Notes: generated by a model not told the origin, from the sequence alone. A DNA stretch of 64,000 bases from Hypanus sabinus (GCF_030144855.1 NC_082730.1:14632001-14696000), one strand, 5' to 3'; positions 1,856 through 60,428 are shown, counted from the stretch's first letter. Translations and numbers: made by a program.

Positions 1856-1892
1856 CGGGCAGGGAACAGATGAGAAGAATCGGAATCCACAT
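1856..1892 (-). CDS. Signal-peptide (leader) exon of receptor gene G0 (MWIPILLICSLP|); rest of gene lies left of the window
   Basis: ATG TGG ATT CCG ATT CTT CTC ATC TGT TCC CTG CCC G|GTGAGT: hydrophobic 12-codon leader with a consensus phase-1 donor that would join the (G)TT TCA GGT GCA = VSGA start of the V exons in this cluster. Confidence 0.85.
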
Positions 1893-1899
1893 GTTCTGT

Positions 1900-2040
1900 T
1901 GACAGTGACCGACTGGGCAGCACTTGCCTGTCACTCAGCTCTTCGCTCTAAGAACTAAATAACAGACTAAACGAAAAGGGACATGGAAGTTGAAAGAGGA
2001 AGAAGGAGACAGCAGGAAGCTCTGTTGTGAAACCACAGTG
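1900..2040 (-). promoter_or_regulatory. Candidate proximal promoter of G0 with ETS/PU.1-like (GAGGAA, CAGGAAG) and RUNX (AACCACA) motifs
   Basis: + strand gaaagaggaagaa at ~1992-2004, gcaggaag at 2012-2019 and aaccaca at 2031-2037, just upstream of the ATG. The caggaa and aaccaca motifs recur in the same order upstream of the leader at 15980. Confidence 0.55.
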
Positions 2041-2743
2041 AGGCACTGCTGAAATTGAATGCCTTAGACTCTTTGTGATTTTTATAAATGACCTGCATGA
2101 GGAAGTGGAGGGATGGGTTAGTAAGTTCTGGATCCACAAAGCAATGAAGAATTGTAAACTGACAATGGAAGCACATCATAATGAACAGCACATCTGAATG
2201 TTAATATACTAGTGACTGGTCCAGGAGCTTCTGAGCATAAACACCAGACACCCAAAATATATATCTTTTATTGCAGAGTTCGGCAATAACCCCTGACTAT
2301 ACAAAGACAAGTATATGATTTTAACACTGTGTTAATACAGGAGATGGCCACTTAATAGCTCCCAGTCTTATCCAGAAAGCTTCATTAAGTACAATTTAAC
2401 ATCACCATTCATCTATTGTCTCACCTGGAGTGTGGAGCAGCAACACCATATATTCTGTTTGGGTAGCCTCCAACCAACGGCATGAAAATCGACTTATATT
2501 TCCCATTATAAAAATTTCCCTCTCATTCCCCTCTTCTCCATTTCCCCACATGAGATTGCCTGGACCTCTGTTGCTTGTAATAGGTATAAATGATTTGCAT
2601 TGAGATAGAGGTACTTTTGTAGAGAAAACAAAATTGTAGGAGCTGTGGATAGTGAGGAATGTGGTTGAAGCAAGATATAGATCAACACGTACAAACAGGC
2701 TGGAGGAAGTCAGCAGGTCGGGCAGCATCTGTGGAAATGAGCA

Positions 2744-2777
2744 GTCAACGTTTCAGGCCACGACCCTTCATCAGGAC
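2744..2777 (-). ncRNA. Minimal type I hammerhead-ribozyme motif within a Penelope-derived short element
   Basis: Minus strand GTC-CTGATGA-AGG GTCGTGG CCT-GAAA-CGT-T-GAC: intact CUGANGA and GAAA core, 3-bp stem II, palindromic ACGT stem III and GTC/GAC stem I. Adjacent to a Penelope-type 3' coding remnant at ~2405-2500. Confidence 0.6.
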
Positions 2778-2829
2778 CACAGCATCTGCAGTGTACTTTG
2801 TGTTTAAGATATAGATCAGCTGGGAGTTT

Positions 2830-3600
2830 GGACAGAGAAAAGACAGATAGACTTCAAATCACCCAAGCATAAGGTATTGCATTTTGGGAGGTCAAAAGCA
2901 AGACAAAATTATGTTGTTACTGGCAGGACCACTTGGAGCACTGATCTACAATGGGATCGTGACATGAAAGTCCACAGCTCCTGAAAGTAACAATGCAAGC
3001 GAACAGGGTCGTAAAGGCAGTGTATGGCAACATTGCCAACATTGAGTATGAAAGTTGGCAAGTCATGTTGCAAATGTTTAAAACTTTGACAACATTTGGA
3101 GTAATTGTGTGTAGTTTTGGTCTCTACACTATAGAAGGAATATGGAGGCTTCGGAGATGATACTGTAGAGGTTAACCATGGTTTGGCCTGGATTAGAGTG
3201 TGATAGCTATATGGAGAGTTTGGACAAAGCTGGTGTGTCAGAACCTGAGGGACGACCTATTGGAAGAGTATAAACTTATGACAGGCATAGACAGAGGAGA
3301 TAGTCATAATTCTCTAGGTAAAATTATAAAATACCAAAGGACTTGCATTCAAGGTGTGCAGTAGAAATCTTTGAAGGGGATGTGAGAGACATTTTTTTTG
3401 ATACGCAGCAAGTATAAATGGTGCCAAATGACATGGTGAAAGCAGATACAATAACAACATTTAAAATGTATTCAAACAGACACATGGACAGGTAAGAACA
3501 TGTGCAGGCAGATGGGATTAGTTAGATTGGAATAATGGTCAGCACAGACAGGGTGAGTCAAAGAGGCTTTCCCTGTGTTATACCCTGATATGATCTATAT
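2830..3600 (+). mobile_element. Degenerate CR1 LINE 3' fragment
   Basis: Recognisable CR1 RT C-terminal and 3'UTR sequence (gtattgcattttgggagg, gagagtttggacaaagctgg) with many stops. Confidence 0.75.
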
Positions 3601-4289
3601 TCTATATTCTTTGCTCCACAGAAATTGCCTGTAAAGGTGAAAGAGTTGATTTCCTATTAGCCTCATGCAGCAATCCCTCGTTATATAACAACCTCAGAAT
3701 CACAAGAATCTTTCTGGGAAAACTTTGCTGTACTCAATCGACTGTAAATGTATCCTTCCTCAGGCAGGATGAACTAGACCTATACAAAATGGTCCAGTTA
3801 CAGTCCTACCAGAGCTCTGTATAATTGGAACATGATAATCTCTCTGTTAATATTTAAATACCTAGAAGTAATTATGATTGAGGAGGGGTTGGTCAGAGAG
3901 GGGTGACAGGGTGGATATTGTGGAATTCAGAATGAGGGACAAGATCATTTTGAGATTTGTAGAGATGATCTAGCCTCCAAGAGGACCACAACCTTGTTAT
4001 GGCTTGGAGGCTTGTGTGCCTCAGTGACTTAGAGAGCCCAGTTGGCTGGATTCAAGACATTATGATTTGGCTCTTGGTAGAATCACCGACGCCAAACACA
4101 TCACAGCAAAGAAGAACCCTTCTACATCTGAGTGCAATGCCATTCCTGATACTTCACCCAGCACTAACACTAGTGAAAATTGAGAGGAAGCTACCGACAT
4201 GATAAAGGAAGCCCGGAACACCACCAGAGATAGAGGACCTTCACTGCTGCCCCAGACACAGTAGCATTATGGGCAGTCACACAGAGATG

Positions 4290-5720
4290 ATCTGGATTCA
4301 GATGCCTCTACTAGCCATTAACCTATCCAACCTTATCTTAAATATTGAAATCGAGCTTGCATGCACCACCTGTGTTGGCACCTCATTCCACATTCTCATG
4401 ATCCCCTGAGTGAAGAAGTTTCCCCCCATGTTCCCCTTCAACTTTTCACCTTCTGCCATTATCCACTGACCTCTGGTTGAAGTCCCACTCAGCGTCAGTG
4501 GAAAAAGCTTGCTTACATTTACCCTCTCTATACCCCTCATAATTTTGTGTACCTCTGTCAAATCTCCTCTCAGTCTTCTATGTTCTAAGGAATACTGTCC
4601 GAAGCTATTCAATCTTTCCATCTAACTAGGGTCCCCCAGACCTGGCATCTTCTTATAAGTTTTCTCTGCACTCTTTCAACCTTGTCTACATCTTTCCTGC
4701 AGATCGATGACCAAAATTGCACACAATACTCCAAATTTGGCCTCAACAACACCTTGTACAACTTTAACATAACATCCCATCTCTAGTATCAATACATTGG
4801 TTTATGAGAGGCAATTTTTCAAAAGCTTTCTTTACAATCCTATCTAACAGTGACACCACTTTCAACAAATTATGGATCAGTATTCCCTTTGTTCTACCAC
4901 ACTCCACAGTGCTCTATCGTTCCCTGTGTAAGACCTACCCTGGCCAGTTCTACTGAAGTGCAAATCCTCAGACTTCTCTGCATTAAATATCATCTGCCAT
5001 TTTTCCAGCTGTTGCGGATGCCTCCACCAACCATGGTCACCTTCCTCACTGCCCACTACACCCCCAGTCTCTGTGTCATCTGCAAATGTGCTGATCCAGT
5101 TAACTATGTTATCATCCAGATCATTACTACAGATGCAAGCAACATCTTGTCTGCCACAGTTAATTCTTTTAGCCATCCTGATTTCTTTCTTAAGTGTTCC
5201 TTTGTATCTCTGATCTTCCATAAGCTCCTCATTTTTTCCAACCTGCTATGCATCTCCTTTTATCTCTTAATCAGGCCACCGATATCTCCTGAAAACCAAA
5301 GTCCCCGACACTTGTTATCTTTCATTTTATTTCCTGACTAGCACATACATGCTTTGTTCTCTCAAAAAATTCATGATTGAAAGCCTCCCACTTACCAAGT
5401 ATATCCTTGCCAAAAAAGCAGCCTGTGCCAAACCACACTTGCCAGGTAATTTCAGATACAATCAAACTTGGTCTTTCTTCCAGTTAGAATATCAACCCGC
5501 GGACCTGACGACTCTTTTTGCATATTTACTTTGAAACCACTGGCATTGGGGTTAGTGTATTTGACAAACTCTATCCCATCTAATCCTATTACAATATGAA
5601 ATTCGCAGTCAATATTTGGAAAGTTAATATCACCTAGTATAACAGCCTTATATTTCTTGCAACTGTTTGAGATCTCTCGACAAATATCTTCTCTAAACCC
5701 CGAGGACTGTCAGGTGATCT
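4290..5720 (-). mobile_element. Degenerate CR1 LINE (ORF2 fragments, internally deleted)
   Basis: ORFs 4298-4621 (ERLNSFGQYSLEHRRLRGDL) and 4877-5221 (FADDTETGGVV..LEKWQMIFNAEK) are CR1 RT motifs; GDFNFPNID-like endonuclease remnant near 5600-5640. Confidence 0.85.
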
Positions 5721-8224
5721 GTAACATAGCCTCATTAATGTGGTCACACCTTTTTATTTCTCAATTCCACCCATAATGCCTCACTAGACATAGTAAAAAC
5801 AAAGTACACTGCAGATTCTGTGGTCAAATCAACATGTACAAACAAGCTGGATGAACTCAGCAGGTTAGGCAGCATCCGTTGAGATGAGCAGTCAATGTTT
5901 CGGGCTGAGACGAAGGGTTCATCTCACTGCTGAGTTCATCTCACTAGACGTGTTCTCCAGTCCATCCTGATGAAGCACTGTCGTGACACTAACCCTGACT
6001 GGGAATACTTCCAACTAAGAATGTGGCCATTGGAACAACTGATGGAATTGAACTCAGGCAGTGTGAGGTGATGCATTTTAGAAAAGTAAACAAGGGCACA
6101 ACTTAAGGACGTTGACTACACCTCACCTTGACTACCCACAGTCACAGTCAATGGTCACAGTCTTTGCCCCAGGATAAGGTAGGTGAAAACTAGAGGGCCT
6201 CAGCTTAAGGTGAGAGGGGAAAGTCTTAGTGGGACTGGAGGAGGAGTGTTTTCCACACAGAGCAGTGTACCGGTGGAAAAGGCTGCCAAAGAAAGTGCTG
6301 GAGGTGGGTATAGATACCTTATTTAAAATACAGTAGGTTAAGTTCACAGAAAGGAAAAACTTTTGAAGGATGTGGGCCAAATGCAGAGAAATGGGAGAAG
6401 CCCAGAAAGTCACTGTGATCAACATGGGCATCTTGGGCCAAGTCACCTGCTTCCATAATCAATGAATCTGCAGCATCCTCTCTAAACTGGAACACACTCT
6501 TGAAAGGTTAAATTCAGAATTCTATTTCATTGAATAAATGTGGCAGCTTATCGGATCACAGTCTATCAGTTTGCACTTCAATTTCAAACATCAAATTACA
6601 TTTATTATTAGAGTATGTTTACTCTATACAACCTTGAGATTCACCTCCTTACAAATAGCCACAAAGCAAAAAAAAACAGAACCCTGTAAGAAAAGACCAA
6701 ACGCGCAAAAAAAAAGGCAAATCATGCAAACCATAAAGTAAGCAACTTACATTCAGAACAAAATTCACAAATGTGAGTCCACAGCCATGAAGCCAGTCAT
6801 CACTGCAGCAAATTCCGGAGCCCATTAATTGCAAGGTACAGCCTCAGTTCAGCACAGAGACAAGCAAACCCTACGGAGCAGTAAGCTGAACACTGGCCCA
6901 TCATTCATCTAGGATTGAGTTTTAAAAAGCTTATTATCCTTTTCACAGCCATGAAATGCAGCAGACTTGTTCATATCTGTACATAGACTCAAATTCCCTT
7001 TCCATATCTCAAAGTGAGTGAGGTATTTCAATCAGCTATCTGAAACTCAGTTTCAGTAGTCAATAATTTACTTGGACTGTTCAAGAAATTCTAAAGCTAG
7101 TGATGACCATAAGACACAGGAGCAGAATGAAACTATTTTGCCCGTAGAGTCTGCCCCAACATTCCATCATGGCTGCGTTATTATCCCACTCAATCCCATT
7201 CTCCTGATTTCTCCCTGTAATCTTCAATGCCTTTACTAAACAAGAAAATATCAAGCTACATTTTAAATATAGCCAATGACTTGGTCTCAAAAGCTATCTA
7301 TGGAACTTCAGTTCCACAGATTCAACAACCTCTGGCTAAATAAATTCATCCTCATCTCTGTTCCAATGTCCAGGCTATACATTCTCCATGTGGAATTCCT
7401 GGGTTTTCCCTGGGTGGTTCCATTTACTCCCACAGTCCAAAGATACACTAGGTGGACGTAAATGGTCTTTGTAAATTCTTCTGTGATTAGGATATAGTTA
7501 ATCATGTTTGTCGAGGGTTGCTGGGCCTGTGTGGTTTGAAGGGCCGGAAGGACCTACGCTGCATTCTATTGGTAAATGAATAAAAGTAAGGGATGTCCCT
7601 GCATACTAAGGCTGATTTTCAGGCAAGATTTCCCTGTAAGGGAAGCTTATTTTATCATATTCCTCCAAGTACATACTCAAAAATCTTGTTCTTAATAACA
7701 GACTTCACCGTCTTCCCAACCACTGGAGTTACGCTCACAGGTATAAAATTTCCTTTCTTTTTCTTCCCTCTTTCCTTAAGAGTGGAGTAACAGTTCAAAT
7801 TTTCCACTGTTCCAGAACATTCCATTGTCCAGTTATTCTTGAAGGATAACCAATAATGCCTCCAAAATCTCTTCAACTTCGTATTTCAGAATCTTTGGAT
7901 GTAGTCTGTTTGGTCCAGATATCTACCTACAGACCCCTCAGCTTCTTAGTAATCACCATCACACTTACTCTGCCCCCGGACATTACCAAATTTCTGTCAT
8001 TCCCACCAATATTTGCAATATTTTATGTCCTCACTTTTGTTTTTATGACAGTGTCACTGTCATACAAACACCGATTCTAGCCTTTTTCAAAGCAGAAGCC
8101 AGAAGTATAATTGTACTGCTCTAAATTTGTCTAGATGTGCAAGTCCAACTATGTTTGAGATGCTCCATATCTTCCAGGAGGAAGTGCCAGACTTAACTGT
8201 TCTCTGCACTTTATTTCTACCCCA

Positions 8225-8345: not shown

Positions 8346-8666
8346 TAGTGTCATTGATTTCTGTCACATAACTACAGATCTCTCCGTTGTTGAAGACTGT
8401 CACATTAACCATTGCACTAGATCTTGCTTCATGCTGATTCAAGGCATTGCAATAATATTGATGGCACGTGTCATTGAAGGGTTGAAAATGTAAAGCCAGT
8501 TCATTGGTATCTGAGATCTTTGGATGTCCAGAATAGGTTTTTTCATACCACGTGTACTGAATGGGAAGCAAACCGTGGAGAGACTCACAGGACACTGACA
8601 CTGAGCCCCTGAGATGTGAGACATTTGCTGGTGACAGATATCGAAGCACAGGAATAGACACGGGTT
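8346..8666 (-). CDS. Ig C2-type domain exon of G1 (EPVSIPVLRYLSP..SVSCESLHG..YTWY..QYYCNALN..CSYVTEINDT), open frame
   Basis: Acceptor ttctttcccacag|AA, donor ACT A|GTAAGT, 321 nt, phase 1-1. B-strand Cys, C-strand Trp and YYC motif present; in frame with the V exon at 9966-10316. Confidence 0.88.
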
Positions 8667-9965: not shown

Positions 9966-10316
9966 CACAGATATTAATGCAGAGATAGTGAGTGATGCAC
10001 AGGGTCCGGAGATGTGCATTAAATCTTGTTTTGAGACCTGGTGTTGCAGTTCCACAGCTGTATCGTCCTATATCTCCAGAGTGAAGATTCTCCATCATAA
10101 TAGTAAATATTCCTTGTTCTGGGTTATCTGTAATTGACACTCGTCCACTCTGTCTGTGTTGCCCATTTGTTTCCACTAAAACTGAACATTGGATAGTCCA
10201 TCCATGGCACCAATACTTTGTGTGTGAGCGGTACGTTGCACCATAGTGACAATTGATTGTGATCGCTCTTCCCACAACTCCTCTTTCATATTTTGCTGCC
10301 CACGTTGCACCTGAAA
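9966..10316 (-). CDS. Ig V-set exon of G1, CD300/TREM/pIgR-like (MDIR-type); open frame, 10 residues longer than paralogues at its C-terminus
   Basis: Acceptor ccttcctcag|TT TCA GGT GCA, donor TGT G|GTAAAT, 351 nt, phase 1-1. Motifs TINCHY, TKYWC, C' Cys (WTIQC), GRVSITDN, FTIMMENL, DIGRYSCG; the extra C-C' Cys pair is typical of CD300/pIgR/TREM V domains. Confidence 0.9.
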
Positions 10317-14970: not shown

Positions 14971-15960
14971 TATGAGTTAAGAATGATTGGGAAAGGGAAC
15001 TTAAGTTTACTATTCCTATGGAGAAATGGGATAAAATTCTTCAACTAGTTAATTCATCCTCTATGTGTTCTAAACATTCATTGATACAGTTTAATGTTGT
15101 GCACAGCACTCATATGTCCAAAGATAAATTAGCTTGTTTTTATTCCCATATAAATCCTAGATGTGACAGATGTCGTTCTGAGACAGCCTCTCTAACTCAT
15201 ATGTTTTGGTCATGTCTGTCTTTGGAAAAATATTGGGAAGACATTTTTGATATTATTTCCACAGTATTGAGTATTGATTTACAATCTCATCCTATTACTG
15301 TAATTTTTGGTTTATCAATGATGGAGTCAATTTATTTATCTCCTTCTGCTTGTCAGTTGATTGCATTTCTTATGTTAATGGCTATAAGATCAATTTTGTT
15401 GAATTGAAAAGAGATTATTCCCCCTACTACATTTCATTGGTTTTCTCAAACAATGTTATGCTTAAATTTGGAAAAAAAATAGAAGCGTCATATATGAGCC
15501 TTCTGTTAAATTTGAAAAGACTTGGAGGCCATTTATTCAATATTTCCACATGATGTAATTTGACCCTTTTCCAAACCTATTTTTTTTCTGTTTCTGATTA
15601 TGTATATGTAGAGAGGATCGATGACACTGATGAGTCTTTGTCTTTTCTTAGATATTATAAACAGCCCATGTTTTTTTTTTCTTTTCCTTTTTTTTAGTTA
15701 GTGGTTAGTTTGTTAGATTAGTTGTTTTCTGGGGTAATTTTTTTTTCTTTTTCTGTTTTTTTTTTCATTTTGATATACCTAGTTTGCTTTCTTTTGTCTT
15801 GTTCATATTATATTCGTATCATGGATGATTTTGGGAGACTTAACTTTATTGTACTTATTGTTTATGTATCCCTTTATATTCATTTTAATTTTGTAATCCC
15901 AATAATTATGTATCAATTTTTGTTACCTCAAGATGGTGATATTAATAAAAAGATTGAAAA
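14971..15960 (+). mobile_element. 5'-truncated L1-clade LINE (ORF2 C-terminus plus 3'UTR), antisense to the receptor genes
   Basis: ORF 15018-15407 with CDRC..LTHMFWSC zinc-knuckle motif, T-rich 3'UTR, and AATAAA followed by the A-rich tail aataaaaagattgaaaaagaagaa. Confidence 0.85.
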
Positions 15961-15980
15961 AGAAGAATCAAAATCCGCAT
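15961..15980 (-). pseudogene. 5' half of a leader exon (MRILILL) of G1, cut by the L1 3' end
   Basis: + strand agaagaatcaaaatccgcat aligns with agaagaatcggaatccacat of the G0 leader. Upstream 15981-16090 aligns with the G0 promoter (acagagacc, aagaact, gcaggaa, tgaaaccacag). The donor half is not found at the other L1 end. Confidence 0.75.
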
Positions 15981-19645: not shown

Positions 19646-20521
19646 CATGTGTGGTTGAATAACAATTAAACTTGAACTATGAACTATGAATATATGCCTA
19701 TCTGAAATGAAATCTGCGGATAATAGATGGACCCGGAATGTGGGACAGCTTCGGAAGAGATAAAAGGAAAGCTAATATTTTACCATAAATCTGTTCTGAT
19801 GTAATGTCAGAATGAGTAATTAACTGTTTTTCTTTCCTGAAGATTCACAACTATTGACAGCAAAAGGATGTCCAGGAGCCTGGATGTAATCTATTTCCCA
19901 TGAATGCAGTTCAGTTCAAAACAAGACACCTTATTGATAATATCAGTTTATGAAGAAGCATTTTTTAATTGATTATTATTCATTGGTTATTAGAATAAAC
20001 AACATCTGCAGGCATTTGAATCCATAAAACAGTGTATAAGGGTATTAATCAGTTCACAGATATGTAAGGGTTAAAATATTTGCTGAATTGGGAAAACTGC
20101 CAGTATATTGATATCAATGAGAGTAACATGTTGCAGAAGGAATTTCAAAAAGTCAAAGTCACTGCCATGAAGGATAACAGTGGGCAGGAGAATGAAAGTT
20201 TGATCTTGATGCAAAGTTGCAGCACAGTCAGTGTAATCTTGGAGACTTCACTTTACCTCCTGGACCACCAAGCTGTGAGGATCAGATTAATTACGTCTCT
20301 GCAAAAGGCAATGGTCAACCCATCAGATTCTTGGACAATGGGATCTCTGCTTTAGTCCACACAGTCACTCACAATGGAATTTTGTCTGATAGAAGCATTC
20401 CATACATTCACATCAAGCATTCTGCACACAAGAAAGCACGTCAAAGCTGAGTTGTATCATCTGCATATAGCTTGGTTTGACCATAGGATAAGAAAGATTT
20501 CATGTATTTAAATGTTTTTCT

Positions 20522-20663
20522 TCAAATGAACAGTATATTTGAAAGTGACTTCTCTGATGTCCATAAGCCTTTCTTGGATTCTCTTGTAAACCACGAGACT
20601 GAACTCGTGCTAATCATCAGGAGAGCAAAGAGCAGCTGACGACCCAACTCCCATATCATGAAA
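20522..20663 (-). CDS. Transmembrane/terminal exon, probably of G2: FMIWELGRQLLFALLMISTSSVSWFTRESKKGLWTSEKSLSNILFI*
   Basis: Polypyrimidine acceptor ctctttccctttgctcag|T (phase 2), hydrophobic span with Arg, basic stop-transfer residues and TGA at 20522-20524. Clear paralogue of 55625-55781. Confidence 0.8.
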
Positions 20664-20811: not shown

Positions 20812-21034
20812 NNNNNNNNNNNNNNNNNNNNNNNNNNNNNNNNNNNNNNNNNNNNNNNNNNNNNNNNNNNNNNNNNNNNNNNNNNNNNNNNNNNNNNNNN
20901 NNNNNNNNNNNNNNNNNNNNNNNNNNNNNNNNNNNNNNNNNNNNNNNNNNNNNNNNNNNNNNNNNNNNNNNNNNNNNNNNNNNNNNNNNNNNNNNNNNNN
21001 NNNNNNNNNNNNNNNNNNNNNNNNNNNNNNNNNN
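20812..21034. other. Assembly gap (223 N)
   Basis: Run of N. Confidence 0.99.
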
Positions 21035-21624
21035 TACAACTACTGGGACATGACGGCAGATAAATGAGGACTGTGAATCAGAAATTGCAAAGTGAAAATA
21101 AATTCTGGAAAGGAAGAGAAGGAAATACTGAAATGCAGAGGTGTGATGATGATAGAGAAAAAAATTGAAGGAAGTGGACACTGCTGTAAGGAAGGCAGTG
21201 AAAGAGTCAACGTGGATAGAGGTGAAAGATAATAAATGATGCATGAATGATGGTGAAAAGGAGAAGAGACATGAAATATGCAAATTAGTATGATTAATAT
21301 AGGGTGGCAGAGTGGAGATATGTCTATATCAAACAAGGTGTAAGGCGCTCCTTCCCTCTGCTTGCCTACAGGTCACATTTGGACAAAGTGTAACAGCTGC
21401 TTAGCCTTCAGATGACGGTCACATGAAGTCATGGAAGCAGGTGGGTAAATAGAAATTTGAACGGCTGTTGCAGCTGTGAATAAAGCAGAGTTCCCATTGT
21501 CGAAGAATCTGATGTGTTGACCATTTTCTTTTGCAGAGACATGATGAATCTGATCCTCACAGCCTGGTTGTCCAGGAGGTAAAGTGAAGACTTCCTGATT
21601 GTACTGACTATATTAGCATTTTAC

Positions 21625-35239: not shown

Positions 35240-35560
35240 CATCAGATACTTGTAGATGCACAGCAAACACTGAATGCTTGCCAGATGTTGTAATTCCACA
35301 TCTGTAATGTCCTGTATCATTAGAGACAAACTTCTCCATAGTAACAGTAAATATTCCCAGGGATGTGTTATCTCTGATTGTCATTCTTCCATACTGCTCA
35401 ATTGTCCCATTTGTATTCACTAACGACATGCACTGACAAACCCACATGTGGCACAAATACTTTGTGTGTGAATGGTACATTGGTACATAGTGACAATCGA
35501 TTGTGATCGCTCTTCCCACAACTCCTCTTACTTTATCTTCTGCTTATAAAGCACCCGGAA
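35240..35560 (-). pseudogene. Ig V-set exon of G2 with an in-frame TAA at 35544-35546 (Trp position) and KYWC changed to KYLC
   Basis: Acceptor gctccctcag|TT CCG GGT GCT TTA TAA, donor GAT G|GTAGGT, 321 nt, phase 1-1; colinear with the G1 V exon. Confidence 0.88.
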
Positions 35561-39717: not shown

Positions 39718-40038
39718 AGTCAAATACTTGTAGATGTACGGTAAATCTCCAATCGGCACCTGGTATTGAAATTCCACAGCTGTACCATCCTGTATCTCCA
39801 GAGTGAAGATCCTCCACAGTAACAGTAAATATTCCCCATTCTAGGTTATCTGTGATTGACAATTGTCCACTTCATCCATGTTGCTCTTTTGTTTCCGCTC
39901 AAACTGAACAGTGACGAGTCTGTCCATGGCACCAGTACTTTGTGTCTGAGCGGTACTTTGCTCCATAGTGACAATCGATTGTGATCACTCTTCCCACAAC
40001 TCCTCTTAAATATTTTGCTGCCCTCAATGCACCTGAAA
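39718..40038 (-). pseudogene. Ig V-set exon of G3 with two in-frame TGA (39899-39901, 39872-39874) and a lost donor
   Basis: Acceptor cctcccacag|TT TCA GGT GCA TTG; TIDCHY, TKYWC, DTGWYSCG motifs; closest paralogue of the G1 V exon, including flanking introns. Confidence 0.9.
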
Positions 40039-43539: not shown

Positions 43540-43581
43540 CGGATAGAAAAGCAGTCAAAAAAATTGAAGACCACAGCTTAT
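43540..43581 (-). pseudogene. Leader exon of G3, (M)KLWSSIFLTAFLS|, with the start codon apparently lost (AT-AAG)
   Basis: AAG CTG TGG TCT TCA ATT TTT TTG ACT GCT TTT CTA TCC G|GTAAGT with a phase-1 donor. Preceded by aaaaAATAAG with no ATG, and by aatgaggaagaaggaagcaggaagt ETS motifs at 43641-43665. Confidence 0.72.
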
Positions 43582-52039: not shown

Positions 52040-54580
52040 CTGTTTCAGGTAATTGAAAATTGCAAGTACATATAATATCATGCAACTAATATATGCAGAC
52101 ATCCACAGTATAGTAAATTTTAAAACTATCCCATTCAGGCCTAAAGATTTAATCACTGTGGAGGATTTCATACTCTTGTGGGGTAACACCTTTACTGACA
52201 AGGGGGAATCACTCTGTTTGGCATGCAAGATGTGACTGAGAAATGGTGTCAGGTTCTGAGGCCTTCTCCATGGTGGTGGTAAGAGCTGACTCTGAGACTG
52301 CAGCAAGTGGTTCTGACAGCTCTGGACACTGTGGTTCTCCTTCCCTTTTCTTTCTTTTGTTTATACATTTTGGTCTTGGGGAGATGCAGTTAGTTAATTG
52401 GGGTATTCTCTCATTAATCCTTCTAGTTTATGATCTGATCTCACCGCTTGGTTTCCACATCCACATCATCATCTGATGTAAAGTCTGCTTTCGACTCTTC
52501 ATTGACTCCTTTCCTTTTGACCTTCCATTAATCCAGCTGAGCTTTGGACATTGCTTCTATTTTTACAAGCAGATTTCTTTCTCCCACTAGAAGTTCATGC
52601 AATAAGCATAATGCACACAGAGTAGATTCTGGATCTTTACATTCACTTACAACTTTCCTGAAGATCCTTGAACTCTCTTCCATTTTAAAACCAAGCTATA
52701 TTTCACACATAACTGCCTGACTAACATGCCAGAACCTTTCTCTGAAATATTGCCAACAAGAACTGTTGTAAATGGACCAGTGCTTTTGTGACTTTCACAT
52801 TTCCTTTGATCAGCTTGCTCCTTCCTTGGTCCAACACGCATTCCAACCAGAAGTACAGATGTTGGCACCAACACCTCTTAGTCCTCTGTTGGGCAATGGT
52901 TCATGTTGTTTCTCATGGAGACAGTTGTGGCATCACCCAGTACCTTTCTCAATGTGTTTTCAGTTGGCTTCATTACAGGGGATATTGTATGGGTCTCCAA
53001 TCAAGTAGAAGTTGTCTCAGCCAAGTATGTCTCCACAATTCTAGTCCTTCTATTTTTAGCACACGTAAGCTCAACGTGGCTTGCTGTTTGTTGTATTTCA
53101 CAGTTACAAATGTTATTCCTACAGGAGTTTTATTTTCTCCAGGATAAGTTCTTAGCTGAGCATCTGCAGGCCTCAGGAGTCTTTGAAATGCTGTTCAAAA
53201 TCATTTTGTGGAATGACTGAAAGACAGAATCAGCAGAACCCAGTGTCCAATTCCATTTTAATTATTTGCCCCATTTATTACCAGCGTAAACAATATTGCT
53301 TGTCTATTGTTAATTTTCACACAGTAAATCTTTAGGCTACATAGTCTAGTGTCACTCTCATCATCATCAGATTTTTCAGCTGCAGCATGTAGATTAGTGC
53401 TCTTTTGAAGCTGCAACTTGACTTTTTAATCTTTCTCTCTTCCCTGTACTGTTCATTTATATTTTTGCTCTGCCTGATATGCTCTATGTATGTGTCCTGC
53501 TTTGTTGCACTTTCTGTAAGTTTCACCGTTAAACCAGCCTTTGTTTGGTGAATGTGAGCCCCTGACACAACGGTAACACAATATTTGTTTGTCATGGCTG
53601 GTTATGGTTCAGAAATTGCAATTTGTTCACATTCACTTTCATTCCTAACTGCAATTCAATTGCATCTCTTTCAGCAGTTTCTGTTGAGACACAAGTTTCC
53701 ACTGTTCTTTTTAATGTGAGTTTTGATTCAGTTAGGAGTCATTTTTGAACGTTTTCTAGTAAGATTCCACAAACTAAATAATCTCTTAGTGCATCATTAA
53801 TCGCATTACCAAACTGACGATGCTCAGATGATCTCTTCAATTCAGCCATGTACACTTTTTGATTCCACTTATGAAACCTAAAGCATTCTGCAATCAACAA
53901 TGACTTTGGTTCCAAATATTCCTGCGCTACTTTGAAAATATCAGCAAAACTCATTTCTGCTGATTTGCTTGGAGCAGTCAAATGTTGAAGCAAACTGTAT
54001 GCCTTTAAAGGCAATGTTCTCAGCAAAACTGGTAATCATTTTTCATTGTCAATTTTATTCACTTTAAAATATGGTTGAATTAGCTTAATACACATATTCT
54101 AATATCTATTGCGGAACCAATCCTTCCAGCATAGACAGCTATTTCTCTTTATGAACCCGTGAATTTAGCTGTTTTCTGACTTTTTAAAAACTCAATCATG
54201 TTTTCCCTGCAAAGAAGAAGCACTGCACTGCTTTTTCTTAAATTATACTCAACTATGCTGGGTTATGATTTTCACTGCAGTTCAACAGTTTGATAATGTT
54301 CTTGGGTATGTTTTAAAATTCCTCATTGCCAATATTATATTTTGTAACTTCAGAACACTAAACTAATTCAAAGGAAAACACAGAAGTATGGGAATGCAAT
54401 TCTAACTTTGTTCTTTAAGTGAGGCCCACATGTACCATATGTGTTACATACATTATCACTGTACCACGTATTTATACACATAACCCATAATGAATTATTT
54501 GAACTAACAAGAAAGCTTAATCAACTACTATCTATATATTCAAGACTACTCAAATGTAACTGAAATATTGAATATGCAAG
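52040..54580 (-). mobile_element. Deleted Gypsy (Mag/K02A2.6-like) element: 5' LTR ~54333-54580, PBS, gag and pol remnants
   Basis: ORF 53739-54026 (YSLLQHLTAP..LEPKSLLIAECFRFH..DALRDYLVCG) is Gypsy gag; PBS-like TTGGCAATGAGGAA at ~54318-54331; integrase C-terminal remnant near 52150-52450. Confidence 0.75.
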
Positions 54581-55624
54581 TGTCCAATAGTTGGGGAGTC
54601 TAGGACCAGAGGACACAGTTTCATAATAGCAGGACATCCCATTAGAACAGAGATGAGGAGGAATTTCTTCAGCCAGAGCATGGTGAAGGTGTGGAATTAA
54701 TTACCACAGATGGCTGTGGATGCCAAGTCATTAGGTATATTTAAAGCGGAGGTTGACATGTTCTTGATTAGTAAGGGAGCTGAAGGCTACAGGGAGAAGG
54801 CAAGAGACTGGGGTTGAGAGGGATAATAAATCAGCCATGATAGGATGCTGTAGCAAACTTGACAGGCCAAATGGCCTAATTCTGCACCTATGTTTATGGT
54901 CTTATGCTCTTGACTCCCTCATGAAAAGCCAGGAGCTTGAAATTGATCTGTTTGCCATGTATGAATTTTCATTCTCAACTAAACCAAAAGGATAAACCAT
55001 TTATTAACATCAGCAGTTTATAAACAAGTATTTTAACTGATTATTTATCAATTATTGGAATATACAACAGCATTGACCTCTGACATGTGAAACCACAGAA
55101 GAGAGTTTATTAGGGTAAAATGGTCTTAATCCATTCACAGCCACGTTAGGGTTAAAATTTATTACTGGGACAACAAAAAAAAAACATATTGAGATCAGTG
55201 AGGTTGACATGTTGGAAATAGAATGCTGAAAAGAAGTCACTGTCTTGAAGTATGGTAATATTACTTTGTCACCTTCATGAAGTTAACAATTCAATGACAA
55301 GAGAGGTTAACTCTTCACAAATGATGCAAGTTGCACAAGAGGGAAGAAGTATGGATATTTTATCTTGGTGCAAAATTCCAGCAGTCAGAAGCCTTCACTT
55401 TACCTTATAGACCAGTCTGTGAGGGTCTGATTCATCAGGTTTCTGTAAAAGGCAATGGTCAAATCATCAGACTCATCGACACTGGGAAATCTGCTTAAGA
55501 GTTGTATTTGGACTCCAATATATTCACATCAAGCATTCTGCACACATACAGTGTGTCAACATCTTGTCAATATCATCTGAAAATATCTTTGGATTGACCA
55601 GTGGATAAGGAAAATTAAATGTGT

Positions 55625-55781
55625 TTAAATGTCTTTCCTCAAATGATGAGTACGATTGAAAGCAAATTCCATTGACCTCCATAAACCTACCTTAGTTTGT
55701 CTTGTGAACCACGTAACTGAAATAGTGCCAATCATCAGCAGAGTGAAGAGCAGCCAACGAAGCACTTTCCATATCATGAAA
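55625..55781 (-). CDS. Transmembrane/terminal exon of G4: FMIWKVLRWLLFTLLMIGTISVTWFTRQTKVGLWRSMEFAFNRTHHLRKDI*
   Basis: Acceptor ctcttcccctttactcag|T (phase 2) matches the phase-2 donor at 59977. About 24 hydrophobic residues with Arg-Trp; TAA at 55625. An internal AAG|GTAGGT could be an alternative donor. Confidence 0.85.
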
Positions 55782-56529
55782 CTGAGTAAAGGGGAAGAGA
55801 TACAGAACTGATGAGATGAAACAAGATGTCTTTGCGTTTGAAACATTAACCTTCTGTTCCCTCTGTAACATTATTGGTGTTGAGTGAGGTAAATAAACAG
55901 AGTCAGAGGAGTTCAACTAGAAGAGTACACTAGTATTGATTGAACAGCGGGATTCAGGAGGGTTACCAACCTGTGATCATCAATTACGGACTGTGACATG
56001 GTCATGTACAAATGAGTTCTTTGATTTAGGAAGTACAAAGTGAAAATGGATTTAGAAGAAATAATGAAGCATAGAGGTGCCTTTATGATACTGAAATATC
56101 ATTGGAGGAAGTGGACACAGCTGTAAGGAACATGCCACATAGTATGTGATTTTTTTTCCATTGCCACCATCAGGGAGGAGGTAGACAAGCATGAAGACAC
56201 ACACTCAATGTTTCAGGAACAGATTCTTCCCCTCCACCAGATTCCTGAAGGCATAATGAACCAACCCATGAAGACTGCCTCAGTATTTTTGCTTTCTTTT
56301 TGTACTACTCATGAATATATATTTCTTATTGCAATTTATAATTTTTATGTATTTCACTGTACTGCTGCCACAAAATAACAAGTTTCATGACCTGTGCCAA
56401 TGATATTAAACCTGATTCTGATTCTGTGAGGAAGACAGAAATCTCTATCGTGTAGGTAGATATGAAAGATAATGAATGATGCATACTGAGAAAACAATCA
56501 TGAGGGTGATCAAAAAGTGTAATTCCCTA

Positions 56530-57000
56530 GTAAACACAAAGTACACTGCAGATGCTGTGGTCAAATCAAGACATACAAAAAAGCTGGATAAACTCAGCAG
56601 GTCAGGCAGCATCCGTTGAAAGGAGCAGTCAACGTTTCGGGCCGAGACCCTTCAACAGGACTAAAGGAGGAGGGGGCAGGGGCCCTATAAAGAATGTGGG
56701 GGGAGGGTGGAATGTGCCAGGTGAAAAACCAATCAGAGGAAAGATCAAGGGGTGGGGGAGGGGAAGCAGGGAGGGGATAGGCCGGAGAAGTGAAGAAGGA
56801 ATATAAGGGGAAAGCACTATGGGTAGTATTCTCCATGACTACTCCTTCACTAACCTCATCCCATGGTCTGAGGAGGAGTTTTGCTTGTTTGCCAAACCCC
56901 AAACTATGGGTCTCAGCCCAAAACATTGACTGTTCCTTTCAACGGATGCTGCCCGACCTGCGGAGTTCATCCAGCTTTTTTGTACGTCTTGAGTGTAATT
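56530..57000. mobile_element. Penelope-derived short element with ~90-bp inverted termini and a degenerate hammerhead motif (56628-56661)
   Basis: aaaaagctggataaactcagcaggtcaggcagcatccgttgaaagg at left is the reverse complement of cctttcaacggatgctgcccgacctgcggagttcatccagcttttt at right. Related copies at ~2640-2800, 5800-5950, 11560-12010 and 16110-16330. Confidence 0.65.
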
Positions 57001-58309
57001 CCCTGACTGCAGTGGGCAAAGTGAAATTGAGTTCAATGGTTTCTAAAGATCTCACTTGCAAGAGAAGGTCTAAAATCCCATTAAGAGACTTTGTAAATTG
57101 AGGAAACAATGGGGTAAATCAATCAGGGCAATGAAAATGACCACAATAGAATGCAATTATAATGATAAGTTATTAGGAACCATGTAGGAATAAAAGCCAG
57201 TTATCTCAAGACAATGACAACATTTTTCATTGTGGTCATTCATTGATTATATTGGTTATTGGAATTACCAAATATCCCTGCATGAAAACAAATCTCAGGG
57301 ATGTATATGGTGACATACATGTACCTTAATAATAAATGTACTTTGAGGTTTGAAATCTTTTCTACAATTCATCCAGTTCAATTACATCTCTTCTTTAGCA
57401 GAGAACCAAAGCTGAACACAACACTCCAAGTGTCATCTCATCAATTGTTTTGTACAACTGAAACATCACATCCCAACTTCTCTACACTGACTGATGCCAA
57501 GTGCCTTCTTCGCTACCTTTTTGAACTCTGACTGCACAATCAAGGAACCATGTCCCTGAATTCCAAGATCCCATTGTTATTTAAATTTTTTCAAAGCTGA
57601 CCAATCACTGTGAAAGTCTTACTTGATTTGACTTTTGAAAATGAAAATAATTTGCACATATCTGAATTAAATTCTACTTGTTATTCCTCAGCTCAAATAC
57701 CAAGCTGATAAAGATCCAGTGTAATTCTTCAAAATCCTATTCACTGTCTTAAAAATTGTCTGAGTGTCATCTACAAATGAATATTTTTTTCTGCAATTAC
57801 TGTTGTTGAGTCATTGGCCAATCCTGCAAATTGTTACCTTATTGCTTTTTGCTCTACCTGCAATCCTTGAGTCAGTAAATGTCAGTGAATATTACAGCAA
57901 GGGGAAAAAGCATCCTGGGGTTTGGCAAATAAACAAAACTCATCCTCAGACCATGGGATGAGGTTAGTGAAGGAGTAGTCATGGAGAATACTGCATGGCA
58001 ACTCTTTGAGTGCAGCAAATGATTCTAATTTCCTAAGAAGAAACTAGACTTGTTTTCCTTGGAGAATATAAGGTTCAGAATGGCTATGATTGACGGATGA
58101 AAAATTATGAGATATACAATTTGGATAGGAGAAAGCAAACATCCCCTTCTCAGAGGTGAATAAAACTAGTTAACATAGATTTAGAAGGGATTTGAATGGA
58201 TTGTTTTCACCCAGAGAGTGGTGGAAACAGTCACAATCAGTGTTCGTGAAGTGTCTGAATGAAGTCTTAAGTCAGATCTCCACAGAAGGCATTGGGCCAT
58301 GTGCTGGAA

Positions 58310-58800
58310 GATAACCATATAACAATCACAGCACGGAAACAGGCCATCTCGGCCCTCCTAGTCCGTGCCAAACACTTTATCTCATCTAGTCCCACCTACC
58401 CGTACTCAGCACATAACCCTCCACTCCTTTCCTGTCCATATACCTTTCCAATTTTACCTTAAATGACACAACTGAACTGGCCTCTACTACTTCTACAGGA
58501 AGCTCATTCCACACAGCTATCACTCTGAGTAAAGAAATACCCCCTCGTGTTTCCCTTAAACTTCTGCCCCCTAACTCTCAAATCATGTCCTCTCGTTTGA
58601 ATCTCCCCTACTCTCAATGGAAACAGCCTATTCACGTCAACTCTATCTATCCCTCTCAAAATTTTAAATACCTCGATCAAATCCCCCCTCAACCTTCTAC
58701 GCTCCAATGAATAGAGACCCAACTTGTTCAACCTTTCCCTGTAACTTAAGTGCTGAAACCCAGGTAACATCCTAGTAAATTGTCTCTGCACTCTCTCTAA
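58310..58800 (-). mobile_element. CR1 LINE 3' fragment
   Basis: ORF 58504-58890 (LERVQRQFTRMLPG..LGLYSLERRRLRGDLIEVFK) and an (ATATG)-type tail at the left end. Confidence 0.9.
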
Positions 58801-58949
58801 TTTAGATAAGATAGGGTTTATTGTGCAGTATTGTGCAAATGTCTTAGGCACATGTGAAATAATTCTGTAATGTGAAGATGCTATCATCAATAATGAAATG
58901 AAAAGTCTCTAACTATCAAACAAATGCTATATAGAGCAGCAAATAGTAA

Positions 58950-59180
58950 AAAAAAAACTAAATCAAAACAACATTGGCTTTAAGACTGGATCAAATCTGT
59001 TTGGTACACAGTCATACAATTTTATAAGCAAGTTAGCTGGGAGGTTGTTCCAAGCATCTTGGAGAACTTGCCACAGTTCTTCTGCGGGCTTTAGCTGTCT
59101 TGCTTCCTTCTGTCTCTCCAGGTAATCCCAGACAGCCTCAATGTTGAGATCAGGATTCTGTAGATGCCAAAACATCTGAA
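58950..59180 (-). mobile_element. Tc1 transposase C-terminal fragment
   Basis: ORF 58963-59175 contains NPDLNIEAVW (SPDLNPIE-like) followed by EELWQVLQDAWNNLP. Confidence 0.8.
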
Positions 59181-59976
59181 ACCATACAATAGTCTAGGGG
59201 GCCTTAGACTTTAGCACAGTACTGCAGATGGATGTGTAATGGAAAGCCACATGTCTATGTTGTATGGCTCTGGGACTGTGTGAACCTATTACACAACACC
59301 ATGATATGAACCCTGAACCTTAAAGTTCAAAGTAGATTTATTGACAAAGGACATAAATGTCACCATATACAATTCAGGGATTCTTTTTTATTGTGGGCAT
59401 ACTTAAAATATCTATAGAATAATAACCACAACAGAATCAATGAAAAACTGCCCACGTAGAGCATTCAACCAGATTATAGAAGACAGCAAACTGTGCAATT
59501 AGAAAAAGAAGAAATAATAAATATTGAGAACATGAATTGAAGAGTCCTTGAAAGTTATTACATTGGTTTTGGGAAAATCTCAATGATGTGGCAAGTGAAG
59601 GTATCACCTGGCCTGTTGAATTCCTTCAGTATTTTGTGTGTGTTGATGAGACAAGTGAAGTTCAGTGAACTTTTCCCCTTTGTTTGTTCATTAAACACTA
59701 ATTATCTACTTCTAAAATATGAACTAATATTAACTTTGAAGTCCAAGTTATTACAAATTATTTAGAGAGATTTAGTTATTTATCTTGGAGTCTTGGGATT
59801 AAAAGATGTAGGAGAGCATTGGTTGTACCACTGAAAACAACATTGACGCAGACATTCTGTACAAGCAAATAATTCTAATTTCTCCCTTAATTATCTCTCA
59901 CATGGGAACAGGACTAATCATAGCACCAGCAATGAGAACATTGTACCTTTAAGCAGAACTATGTCAAGAGGTTTAC

Positions 59977-60022
59977 CTTGCAGTTGATACTGTTGTAAAT
60001 GTTTCACATGAATATTCACGTC
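59977..60022 (-). CDS. 46-nt linker exon of G4: (x)GA-REYSCETFTTVSTA-(AG)
   Basis: Acceptor ttatctttccttgtctcaacag|GA (phase 1) and donor GCA AG|GTAAAC (phase 2), exactly converting phase 1 to the phase-2 TM exon. Confidence 0.75.
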
Positions 60023-60105
60023 CTGTTGAGACAAGGAAAGATAATTCAGTCTCACATGCTTTGCAAATGCAGCCAAGCAAGAGTACATGGTTGACGGGTG
60101 GAAAC

Positions 60106-60428
60106 TCATGCCTCAATAAAGGACTGATTGGTTACATGGAGGTGAGTAATTTCTGTTTCCTGTGCAAATGTGAACATCGATGTTCCTGGGGAAGTTATGG
60201 GGCTTGGATCGCTGGGATTGAAAACCTTATTTAATCCTGTGCGAACAGAAGTGGAAGTTCCAGCTGGGCTAATGACTGCTGCCAGCACTGGGAGATCTGT
60301 TGTTGGGGTCGCAACATCTACCAGAGGGATGAACTCATCTCTGCTCAGAGGGTATGTGGAGATATTGGACCAAGTACAGTTGTTGATACGACAGTGTAAT
60401 GCTTCTGTTCTCAATGAAAAGGCAACTC
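60106..60428 (-). CDS. Putative Ser/Thr/Pro-rich (mucin-like) stalk exon of G4; donor not identifiable, frame runs to TGA
   Basis: Acceptor tttacattataccag|GA (phase 1), then 106 open codons (VATPTTDLP..SPAGTSTS..PSDPSPITSPGTS), ~85 nt upstream of the linker exon. Confidence 0.5.

What the first reader, a model, noticed from the sequence alone, without database searches (positions are those of the whole stretch)
1856..60428. Tandem cluster of five CD300/pIgR-like (MDIR-type) receptor genes, mostly invisible to the ORF track
Seen: three homologous leader exons, three V exons, one C2 exon, one or two EYSC linker exons, a mucin-like exon and two TM exons, all on the minus strand with compatible splice phases (leader 1, V 1-1, C2 1-1, linker 1-2, TM 2). 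Known: V domains with an extra C-C' Cys pair define the CD300/TREM/pIgR group, and a modular family of this type (MDIR) was described from skate. Inferred: this is a rapidly turning-over immune receptor complex of a ray, with modular L-V-(C2)-(mucin)-linker-TM architecture.
Basis: partly seen in the sequence, partly recalled or inferred. Interest (0 to 1): 0.82.

Follow-up and report, generated by a model that had tools for sequence, protein, structure and literature searches.

The report
Ray MDIR receptor cluster, mostly pseudogenes
This stretch of a ray genome is part of a known family of innate immune receptor genes (skate MDIR, related to CD300 and pIgR), but most copies here are decayed, so it is an ordinary example of gene birth and death.

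Summary
They belong to the MDIR family. A profile that includes the window's V1 and C2 exons hits clearnose-skate MDIR5 (E 1.5e-206) and MDIR2 (E 8.9e-107). The V exons match pIgR and CD300 V domains, not antigen-receptor V.

"Five receptor genes" is not supported. The window holds remains of four transcription units:
- **W:** only an intact 3' end (linker, TM and tail exons).
- **X:** a pseudogene. Its leader has CTG instead of ATG, V3 has two stops and no donor, V2 has one stop, the TM exon has lost its donor, and the tail exon has an early stop.
- **Y:** V1 and C2 are still open. Its leader has a stop before any donor, the V1 donor is lost, and no stalk or TM exon follows.
- **Z:** only an intact leader; the rest lies off-window.

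The "mucin-like exon" has no phase-compatible donor and no homologue.

The N gap lies in an intron 149 bp from the decayed TM exon, and no claimed frame crosses it.

Unchecked notes from this scan report the same family repeatedly over about 2 Mb of this genome. The family is already annotated in related rays, so interest is low.

The parts
59977..60022 (-). Gene W linker ('EYSC') exon, (G)REYSCETFTTVSTA(S). Phase 1-2, acceptor CAACAG|GA, donor CAAG|GTAAAC. Intact.
   Evidence: splice sites and coordinates; 83% identical to GREYSCETFTTVST of Mobula P0023, and the same motif occurs in P0012, P0013 and P0014; the skate stalk exon has the same acceptor context and phases.
55691..55781 (-). Gene W transmembrane exon TM-B, (S)FMIWKVLRWLLFTLLMIGTISVTWFTRQTK. 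Phase 2-0, donor AAG|GTAGGT. Lys and Arg lie at the outer end of the helix. Intact.
55395..55442 (-). Gene W cytoplasmic exon cyt-B, KPDESDPHRLVYKVK plus stop. No ITIM or ITAM motif. Intact.
   Evidence: 67% identical to the Hypanus P0014 tail.
43540..43576 (-). Gene X leader homologue, LWSSIFLTAFLS+G. The phase-1 donor G|GTAAGT is kept, but the initiator is CTG and there is no in-frame upstream ATG. Pseudo-exon.
39719..40038 (-). V3, an N-terminal-type V exon of gene X. Two in-frame TGA stops (39901-39899 and 39874-39872), and no GT at the canonical donor position.
   Evidence: Tree placement.
35240..35560 (-). V2, a membrane-proximal ('second V') type exon, 321 nt, phase 1-1, with a good donor GATG|GTAGGT. 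It has TAA at 35546-35544 where homologues have Trp.
   Evidence: placed inside a clade with 99% SH-aLRT support made up of second V domains of Mobula, Hypanus and Hemitrygon; 82% identical to Hemitrygon P0036.
20573..20663 (-). TM-A, decayed transmembrane exon, (S)FMIWELGRQLLFALLMISTSSVSWFTRESK. The donor GT has become AA. Lys is replaced by Glu, Trp by Gln and Ile by Ser.
   Evidence: 79% identical to TM-B.
20248..20298 (-). cyt-A, decayed cytoplasmic exon, RRN*SDPHSLVVQEVK*. TAA at 20289-20287 falls where homologues have DE.
20812..21034 (.). Assembly gap (N). It lies in the intron upstream of TM-A and was not read across.
15942..15980 (-). Gene Y leader homologue, MRILILLFQSFY*. ATG is kept, Trp has become Arg, the donor region is deleted and a stop comes before any GT. 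Pseudo-exon.
   Evidence: (E 4.6e-8 to the leader X region).
10006..10316 (-). V1, an N-terminal-type V exon with an open frame and all four Cys present. There is no GT at the canonical donor. The next phase-1 GT (9965-9964) would add TLCITHYLCINIC.
8346..8666 (-). C2 exon, 321 nt, open frame, phase 1-1. A Cys present in all six aligned homologues (LHC) is Phe here.
1856..1892 (-). Gene Z leader, MWIPILLICSLP+G with donor G|GTGAGT. Intact. The rest of the gene lies below coordinate 1.
   Evidence: 100% identical to the Hemitrygon P0081 leader.
60109..60339 (-). 'Mucin-like' Ser/Thr/Pro-rich ORF. Not supported as an exon.
21536..21586 (+). Orphan copy of the cytoplasmic exon in inverted orientation, RHDESDPHSLVVQEVK*, open, with acceptor TTTTGCAG. 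It lies about 500 bp beyond the gap.
   Evidence: (20226-20357 against 21609-21478, 87% identical, inverted).

Best explanation
The window is a slice of a large MDIR-type (CD300/pIgR-like) immune receptor cluster in a stingray-like ray. It is evolving by duplication and decay.

**What the family encodes.** Intact members are type I membrane proteins with this layout:
- a leader;
- one to four Ig modules, in which pIgR/CD300-type V domains carrying an extra C-C' disulfide alternate with C2 domains;
- a short Cys-containing linker;
- a transmembrane helix;
- a tail.

The form seen here has Arg (and Lys) at the outer end of the helix and a roughly 20-residue tail with no signalling motif. By inference from CD300 and other paired receptors, this is the activating form, which signals through a separate ITAM-bearing adaptor. 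The ligand and the adaptor are unknown.

**What lies in the window, read 5' to 3' on the minus strand:**
- **W:** the intact linker, TM and tail exons. Its Ig exons lie beyond 64000.
- **X:** a dead L-Va-Vb-TM-tail gene. It is paralogous in its Va half and its TM half to its two neighbours.
- **Y:** a relic with open V1 and C2 exons, but a dead leader, a lost V donor and no membrane anchor.
- **Z:** the intact leader of the next gene.

LINE, LTR-retroelement and SINE copies fill the introns and spacers.
For: **Family**
- V1 reaches Pfam V-set at 3.6e-10.
- Among solved structures the best matches are pIgR D1 and CD300, with both Cys pairs aligned.
- The nearest proteins are ray 'CMRF35-like' and 'pIgR-like' proteins at 62-77% identity.
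- The profile search hits MDIR5 at 1.5e-206 and MDIR2 at 8.9e-107.
- V1 is 62-66% identical to the MDIR5 V domains, and C2 is 56% identical to the first MDIR5 C2 domain.

**Architecture and phases**
- The annotated skate gene has identical phases.
- V2 falls in a clade with 99% SH-aLRT support made up of membrane-proximal V domains. V1 and V3 fall with N-terminal V domains.

**Decay**
- Three stops lie in V2 and V3.
- Leader X has CTG and no upstream ATG.
- Leader Y has a stop and a deleted donor.
- The TM-A donor is lost and cyt-A has TAA.
- V1 and V3 have lost their donors.
- No further family exon lies in 1960-8346 or 56000-64000.
- The V1 and V3 exons are 81.7% identical against 79.5% for their flanks, and their dN/dS is 1.2.

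**Duplication**
- Colinear anchors link 6210-21193 with 38522-56130.

**Transposons**
- Endonuclease, reverse-transcriptase and integrase domains are present, and a SINE family recurs across the window.
Against: - V1 and C2 are still open over 321 nt each. V1 keeps its Cys residues and the DxGxYxC motif, so gene Y may have died recently or may still be used in some way I cannot see.
- There is no transcript data for this species.
- W and Z are judged from only 3 and 1 exons, so their intactness as whole genes is not shown.
- dN/dS near 1 also fits diversifying selection.
- The activating function and the adaptor pairing are inferred from the TM Arg and the short tail alone.
- One 2014 survey found no FcR gamma homologue in sharks (PMC4016189).
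- The assembly gap and a nearby inverted exon copy leave room for local misassembly around TM-A.
Confidence: 0.8

Rival explanations
1. One reading: five functional tandem receptor genes that are simply missed by ORF tracks.
For: All the exon types exist with compatible phases. V1, C2, the linker, TM-B, cyt-B and leader Z are intact.
Against: At least nine separate lesions affect X and Y, of different kinds: three stops in V2 and V3, a lost ATG, a stop in leader Y, three lost donors and a tail stop. Only two TM exons and one usable leader exist for the supposed five genes. No Ig exon lies near the W linker, and no anchor follows C2.
Confidence: 0.04
2. Gene Y (V1 and C2) is a live gene that makes a soluble or unconventionally anchored two-domain protein. 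It would start from an undetected leader, or from the in-frame ATG at 10428 that opens the 189-aa ORF running into V1. It would end by read-through after C2 into a hydrophobic stretch (IFFCFSVTAALILLVMV).
For: The V1 and C2 frames are open. The C2 splice sites are consensus. RefSeq models in Hypanus and Hemitrygon (P0004, P0006, P0007, P0008) also end shortly after ...YVTEIN.. with short non-conserved tails. A read-through hydrophobic segment exists.
Against: - The homologous leader has a stop and no donor.
- The residues upstream of V1 are broken by Asp, Glu and Ser and are not a credible signal peptide. The paralogous V3 upstream region has a stop there.
- The V1 donor is lost, so V1 and C2 join only through a cryptic site that adds 13 residues with three Cys.
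- A conserved C2 Cys is lost.
- The exon is no more conserved than its flanks.
Confidence: 0.1
3. The lesions are assembly or sequencing errors in a repeat-rich, gapped region, and X and Y are intact in the animal.
For: There is an assembly gap at 20812-21034, and an inverted copy of the tail exon lies 500 bp from it. Paralogous blocks invite collapse or chimeric joins.
Against: The lesions are spread over 35 kb, mostly far from the gap. They include a two-base change (the Trp codon TGG of homologues reads TAA in V2), multi-base deletions at donors, and many amino-acid replacements at conserved sites. The paralogues differ by 20-30%, too much for mis-collapse.
Confidence: 0.05

Closest known systems
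Modular domain immune-type receptors (MDIR2, MDIR5) of the clearnose skate Rostroraja (Raja) eglanteria. Cannon et al. 2006, Immunogenetics 58:362, cited in PMC3031540.
   Same: - Same V and C2 domain types: V1 is 62-66% identical to the MDIR5 V domains and C2 is 56% identical to its first C2 domain.
- Same linker-TM-tail design: MDIR5 has ..GHEYSCEN..SYISWKVGRWLLF..KKRDESEP.. and the window has ..REYSCET..SFMIWKVLRWLLF..KPDESDP...
- Both are multigene families with variable numbers of Ig modules.
   Different: - The species is different (a stingray-like ray).
- Most copies in the window are pseudogenes or fragments.
- No inhibitory (ITIM-tailed) form such as MDIR2 lies in this window.
RefSeq 'polymeric immunoglobulin receptor-like' and 'CMRF35-like molecule' genes of Mobula birostris, Mobula hypostoma, Hypanus sabinus and Hemitrygon akajei (for example P0011-P0015, P0036, P0003, P0005).
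   Same: These are the nearest relatives. V2 is 82% identical to P0036, V1 up to 77%, and C2 72-73%. The leader of Z is identical to P0081, and the linker is 83% identical. The architectures L-V-C2-V-(C2)-linker-TM-tail and L-V-stalk-TM-tail are shared.
   Different: No listed protein is identical to any window exon, so these are paralogues or orthologues from another species. Gene X lacks the C2 exon between its two V exons.
Mammalian CD300 (CMRF35-like) family.
   Same: The V domain has a second (C-C') disulfide, with E 2e-16 to CD300 structures. Both families have activating members with a charged TM residue and a short tail, and both show clustered gene birth and death.
   Different: CD300 proteins have a single V domain and no C2 modules. 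The mammalian and reptile V domains form a separate branch from all the chondrichthyan ones (support 92).
Polymeric immunoglobulin receptor (pIgR).
   Same: It gives the best structural-database match to V1, including both Cys pairs.
   Different: pIgR is built of V-like domains only. By general knowledge, not tested here, it has a long tail with sorting signals for transcytosis. The genes here alternate V with C2 domains and have a 15-residue tail exon. The RefSeq name 'pIgR-like' reflects V-domain similarity, not function.

Membership tests
MDIR (modular domain immune-type receptors) | Direct sequence relatedness to the described skate MDIR proteins | tested here: met
   A profile containing window V1 and C2 hits MDIR5 at 1.5e-206 and MDIR2 at 8.9e-107. 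In pairwise comparison, V1 against MDIR5 is 62-66% identical (E about 1e-41), and C2 against MDIR5 is 56% (E 1e-37).
MDIR (modular domain immune-type receptors) | V domains resembling CD300, TREM or pIgR rather than antigen-receptor V (as summarised in PMC3031540) | tested here: met
   pIgR and CD300 at 1e-16 to 1e-42, TREM2 at about 1e-4, TCR at 2e-3.
MDIR (modular domain immune-type receptors) | Modular build: variable numbers of Ig modules joined by phase-1 exons onto a shared linker, TM and tail | tested here: met
   The V and C2 exons are all 321 nt and phase 1-1, the linker is 1-2 and the TM 2-0. The thorny-skate gene model has the same phases. Homologues carry 1 to 4 Ig domains.
MDIR (modular domain immune-type receptors) | A multigene family with activating and inhibitory members | tested here: inconclusive
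   Only the short-tailed type with a TM Arg occurs in the window. ITIM-tailed relatives exist in other rays (P0024-P0026, P0058). Other notes of this scan claim such genes elsewhere in this genome, but I did not check them.
MDIR (modular domain immune-type receptors) | Expressed, translatable genes | tested here: not met
   This holds for units X and Y, which have stops, dead leaders and lost donors. It cannot be tested for W and Z, which are cut by the window's ends.
CD300 | A single V domain with an extra C-C' disulfide | tested here: not met
   The extra Cys pair is present, but the genes here and their relatives combine V with C2 or with a second V.
pIgR | An ectodomain of tandem V-like domains only, with a long cytoplasmic tail | tested here: not met
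   A C2 exon follows V1. The tail exon encodes 15 residues.
pIgR | Binding and transcytosis of polymeric immunoglobulin | not testable with these tools
   This needs binding and transport assays.

The most novel reading that the evidence does not exclude
The open but orphaned V1-C2 pair, and perhaps the stop-bearing V exons, are not just debris. They could be kept as a reservoir that is still used. One route would be an unconventional soluble V-C2 product. Another would be as donors for gene conversion or exon shuffling into the live neighbours W and Z, which would make modular exon exchange the way this receptor family diversifies.
Probability: 0.07. Interest if true: 0.45.

Novelty: new member of a known kind. 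Interest (0 to 1): 0.22.

Why it matters
**What it adds.** The window shows, exon by exon, how an MDIR-type (CD300/pIgR-like) receptor cluster turns over in a ray. Segmental duplication copies a unit that runs from the TM exon of one gene to the V exon of the next. Leaders, splice donors and frames are then lost, and transposons fill the gaps.

**What it corrects.** There are not five hidden genes here. There are two gene ends and two decayed units.

**A caution on naming.** 'pIgR-like' labels in ray annotations rest on V-domain similarity alone. That matters because a true cartilaginous-fish pIgR was not found in a 2014 survey (PMC4016189).

**Limits.** It opens no new question. The family was described in 2006, and intact relatives are already annotated in several rays.

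Tried and rejected
- **False leader at 11701-11669.** This leader-like hit (WPEILTIYSLP) looked like the leader of V1, but it is a copy of a dispersed SINE-like repeat. The true homologue is at 15980.
- **Ab initio scans.** A scan for ATG, a hydrophobic core and a phase-1 donor found only the 1892 leader. A hydrophobicity scan for a further TM exon between C2 and leader Z, or upstream of the W linker, found nothing credible.
- **Second EYSC exon.** Searches by regular expression and by short-word blastn found none.
- **Mucin-like ORF.** It was tested for donors, against 102 family proteins and against 1.84 billion representative proteins. The only hits were unrelated low-complexity proteins.
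- **Genomic loci of homologues.** Fetching failed for P0005 and P0006 because isoforms are not on record. For Mobula P0003 no DNA was available because the file was too large. Only the Amblyraja locus L001 was usable.
- **Literature.** The original MDIR paper (PMC3701310) and a review (PMC2823954) are not held. The MDIR definition therefore rests on PMC3031540's summary and on the deposited MDIR2 and MDIR5 sequences.
- **Other checks.** tRNA and tandem-repeat scans gave nothing relevant. I ran no structure prediction, because the sequence matches to solved pIgR and CD300 domains were already decisive.


Full report
**Gap test**

The window has one N run, 20812-21034. No exon or reading frame in the finding crosses it. 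The nearest exon is the decayed transmembrane exon TM-A at 20663-20573, whose acceptor lies 149 bp below the gap.

The two flanks, 20179-20775 and 21062-21193, align in the same order and orientation to 55338-55893 and 56010-56130 of a paralogous block. The gap therefore sits in the intron upstream of TM-A, and continuity is plausible. ORFs listed as spanning it are runs of X and mean nothing.

One caution remains. An inverted, open copy of the tail exon lies at 21536-21586 on the plus strand, about 500 bp past the gap. A local rearrangement or misjoin there cannot be excluded.

**What is in the sequence**

Searching the window with its own V and C2 ORFs, and then with 102 related proteins, gives a stable exon map. 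All exons are on the minus strand. Read 5' to 3' along that strand:

| Exon | Coordinates | State |
|---|---|---|
| Linker REYSCETFTTVSTA | 60022-59977 | phase 1-2, intact |
| TM-B | 55781-55691 | phase 2-0, intact |
| Tail KPDESDPHRLVYKVK* | 55442-55395 | intact |
| Leader homologue X | 43576-43540 | CTG instead of ATG |
| V3 | 40038-39719 | two stops, donor lost |
| V2 | 35560-35240 | one stop |
| TM-A | 20663-20573 | donor lost |
| cyt-A | 20298-20248 | early stop |
| Leader homologue Y | 15980-15942 | stop before any donor |
| V1 | 10316-10006 | open, donor lost |
| C2 | 8666-8346 | phase 1-1, open |
| Leader Z, MWIPILLICSLP | 1892-1856 | donor G\|GTGAGT, intact |

The annotated thorny-skate gene for P0009 (locus L001) has L, V, C2, stalk, TM and tail exons. 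Its phases and even its acceptor contexts are the same.

**Family**

V1 is a V-set domain. Among solved structures it matches pIgR domains and CD300 proteins, at 1e-16 to 1e-42 for whole chains. Both the B-F and the C-C' cysteines align. TREM2 scores about 1e-4 and a TCR 2e-3.

The nearest database proteins are ray 'CMRF35-like' and 'pIgR-like' proteins at 62-77% identity. A profile of six of these plus the window's V1 and C2 retrieves 102 proteins. Nearly all are chondrichthyan. They include clearnose-skate Modular domain immune-type receptor 5 (E 1.5e-206) and receptor 2 (E 8.9e-107). Pairwise, V1 is 62-66% identical to the MDIR5 V domains, and C2 is 56% identical to its first C2 domain.

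The window's linker, TM and tail read REYSCET...SFMIWKVLRWLLF...KPDESDP. The MDIR5 C-terminus reads HEYSCEN...SYISWKVGRWLLF...KKRDESEP. MDIRs are described as skate receptors with V domains like those of CD300, TREM and pIgR, forming a multigene activating/inhibitory family (PMC3031540, citing Cannon et al. 2006). Membership is met by direct sequence test.

In a tree of 118 V domains, V2 falls inside a clade with 99% SH-aLRT support. That clade consists of the membrane-proximal 'second V' of Mobula, Hypanus and Hemitrygon proteins. V1 and V3 fall with the N-terminal V domains of the same rays. Mammalian and reptile CD300 V domains form a separate branch. The source is therefore a stingray-like (myliobatiform-like) ray. 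No listed protein is identical to a window exon.

**How many genes, and are they alive?**

*Unit W.* It is represented only by its intact last three exons. No Ig exon lies between 56000 and 64000, so the rest is off-window.

*Unit X.* It consists of leader X, V3, V2, TM-A and cyt-A. This matches the L-Va-(C2)-Vb-linker-TM-tail layout of proteins such as P0013 and P0036, including the tail type RRDES.PHSLVVQEVK. It is dead for these reasons:
- The leader has CTG for ATG and no upstream in-frame ATG.
- V3 has two TGA stops and has lost its donor.
- V2 has TAA where homologues have Trp.
- The TM-A donor GT has become AA, and the exon carries Lys-to-Glu, Trp-to-Gln and Ile-to-Ser changes.
- cyt-A has TAA at its fourth codon.

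*Unit Y.* It keeps open V1 and C2 exons, but the rest is broken:
- Its leader homologue reads MRILILLFQSFY*, and the donor region is deleted.
- V1 has no GT at the canonical ..HLQVSD G|gt position. The next phase-1 GT is 13 codons further on and would insert TLCITHYLCINIC.
- A Cys present in all six aligned C2 homologues is Phe here.
- No stalk, TM or tail exon lies between C2 and leader Z.

*Unit Z.* It is only an intact leader. Another first-stage note of this scan (s1-179882) describes the rest as an intact activating receptor off-window. I could check only the leader.

*Signs of neutral evolution.* The V1 and V3 exons are no better conserved (81.7%) than their flanks (79.5%). Their dN/dS is 1.2. 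This fits neutral decay of at least one copy, although diversifying selection would look similar.

**Duplication and filler**

Colinear anchors link block A (6210-21193) to block B (38522-56130) at about 66-80% identity. The anchors are the TM/tail region, the leader region, the V region and a downstream piece. The duplicated unit therefore ran from the TM exon of one gene to the V exon of the next. The C2 exon is present only in block A.

The spacers hold a LINE with endonuclease and reverse-transcriptase domains, an LTR-type element with integrase and reverse transcriptase, and a dispersed SINE-like repeat. That repeat produced one false 'leader' at 11701, which I rejected.

**The mucin-like exon**

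The Ser/Thr/Pro-rich ORF at 60339-60109 has a possible phase-1 acceptor. It has no GT in phase 1 anywhere in frame, so it cannot join the phase-1 linker exon. It matches none of the 102 family proteins. Among 1.84 billion representative proteins it gave only four hits. The three I scanned against Pfam carry unrelated domains and no Ig V domain, and the fourth has the same many-short-stretch, low-complexity match pattern. I treat it as not an exon.

**Mechanism**

*Shown:* the domain types, the exon modularity, and an Arg (with Lys) at the outer end of the TM helix that is conserved across relatives (..W.VGRW..). The tail is short and has no ITIM or ITAM motif.

*Inferred from CD300 and other paired receptor families:* intact members of this type are activating receptors that pair through the TM Arg with an ITAM adaptor. 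The inhibitory relatives (MDIR2, P0024-P0026) carry ITIM-like Tyr motifs.

*Unknown:* the ligand and the adaptor. A 2014 survey reported no FcR gamma or pIgR homologue in sharks (PMC4016189).

**Verdict**

The family call, the modular layout and the splice phases are confirmed. The count of five genes, the mucin exon and two of the three leaders are not. The family has been known since 2006, and intact relatives are annotated in several rays.

Unchecked notes of this scan report the same family repeatedly in this genome, from about 1.4 Mb before to 0.7 Mb beyond the window. This is a new but largely decayed set of members of a known kind, and interest is low.

Noticed in passing
window 21536-21586 (+), with 21478-21609 inverted relative to 20226-20357: An open, inverted copy of the receptor tail exon (RHDESDPHSLVVQEVK*, with its acceptor) lies about 500 bp past the assembly gap. 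It is 87% identical to the decayed minus-strand copy. It is either a real inverted partial duplication or a sign of misassembly at the gap.
   Followed up: partly
window 11619-11732, 11933-12013, 16120-16235, 51669-51778, 60441-60606, 2681-2777, 56565-56661, 5791-5911: A dispersed short repeat of about 100 bp, SINE- or MITE-like, with core GGCCTGAAATGTTGACTG...CATAGATGCTGCCTGACCTGCTGAG. It sometimes occurs as inverted pairs (60441-60603 pairs with itself). One copy mimics a leader peptide in translation.
   Followed up: partly
window 27800-32200 (+), with repeats 23680-24198, 32607-33115, 36806-37327 and 27332-28157, 33117-33905: An LTR-type retroelement remnant with integrase (29950-30471) lying upstream of reverse transcriptase (31370-31924). 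It is flanked by 0.5-0.8 kb repeats at 78-87% identity that each contain a 32-bp tandem repeat (23782, 32701, 36908).
   Followed up: partly
window 24290-27263 (-): A LINE with an endonuclease/reverse-transcriptase region broken into several ORFs. A more diverged relative (63% identical) lies at 49301-50647.
   Followed up: partly
L001 (Amblyraja radiata) 40195-40521: The annotated skate gene for P0009 skips an intact-looking second V exon that lies about 26 kb after the first V and 1.6 kb before the C2 exon. This could mean alternative use of V modules or a merged gene model.
   Followed up: no
window 13887-13958 (-) and 18259-18369 (-): Short matches to the odd C-terminal tails of some RefSeq ray receptor isoforms (P0023 and P0012 ..RHEHFQSQYRGLKGEQGMEIKAGC; P0028 ..RRYRSLRSHTTRF..). 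They look transposon-derived, which suggests that some annotated isoform ends in other rays are exonised repeats.
   Followed up: no
window 9862-10428 (-): The ORF holding V1 runs upstream through the acceptor to an ATG at 10428 (MDHMHTGCDLVLLSSSYSELFVCIELFLPQ...). It is not conserved in the V3 paralogue and is not a convincing signal peptide.
   Followed up: partly
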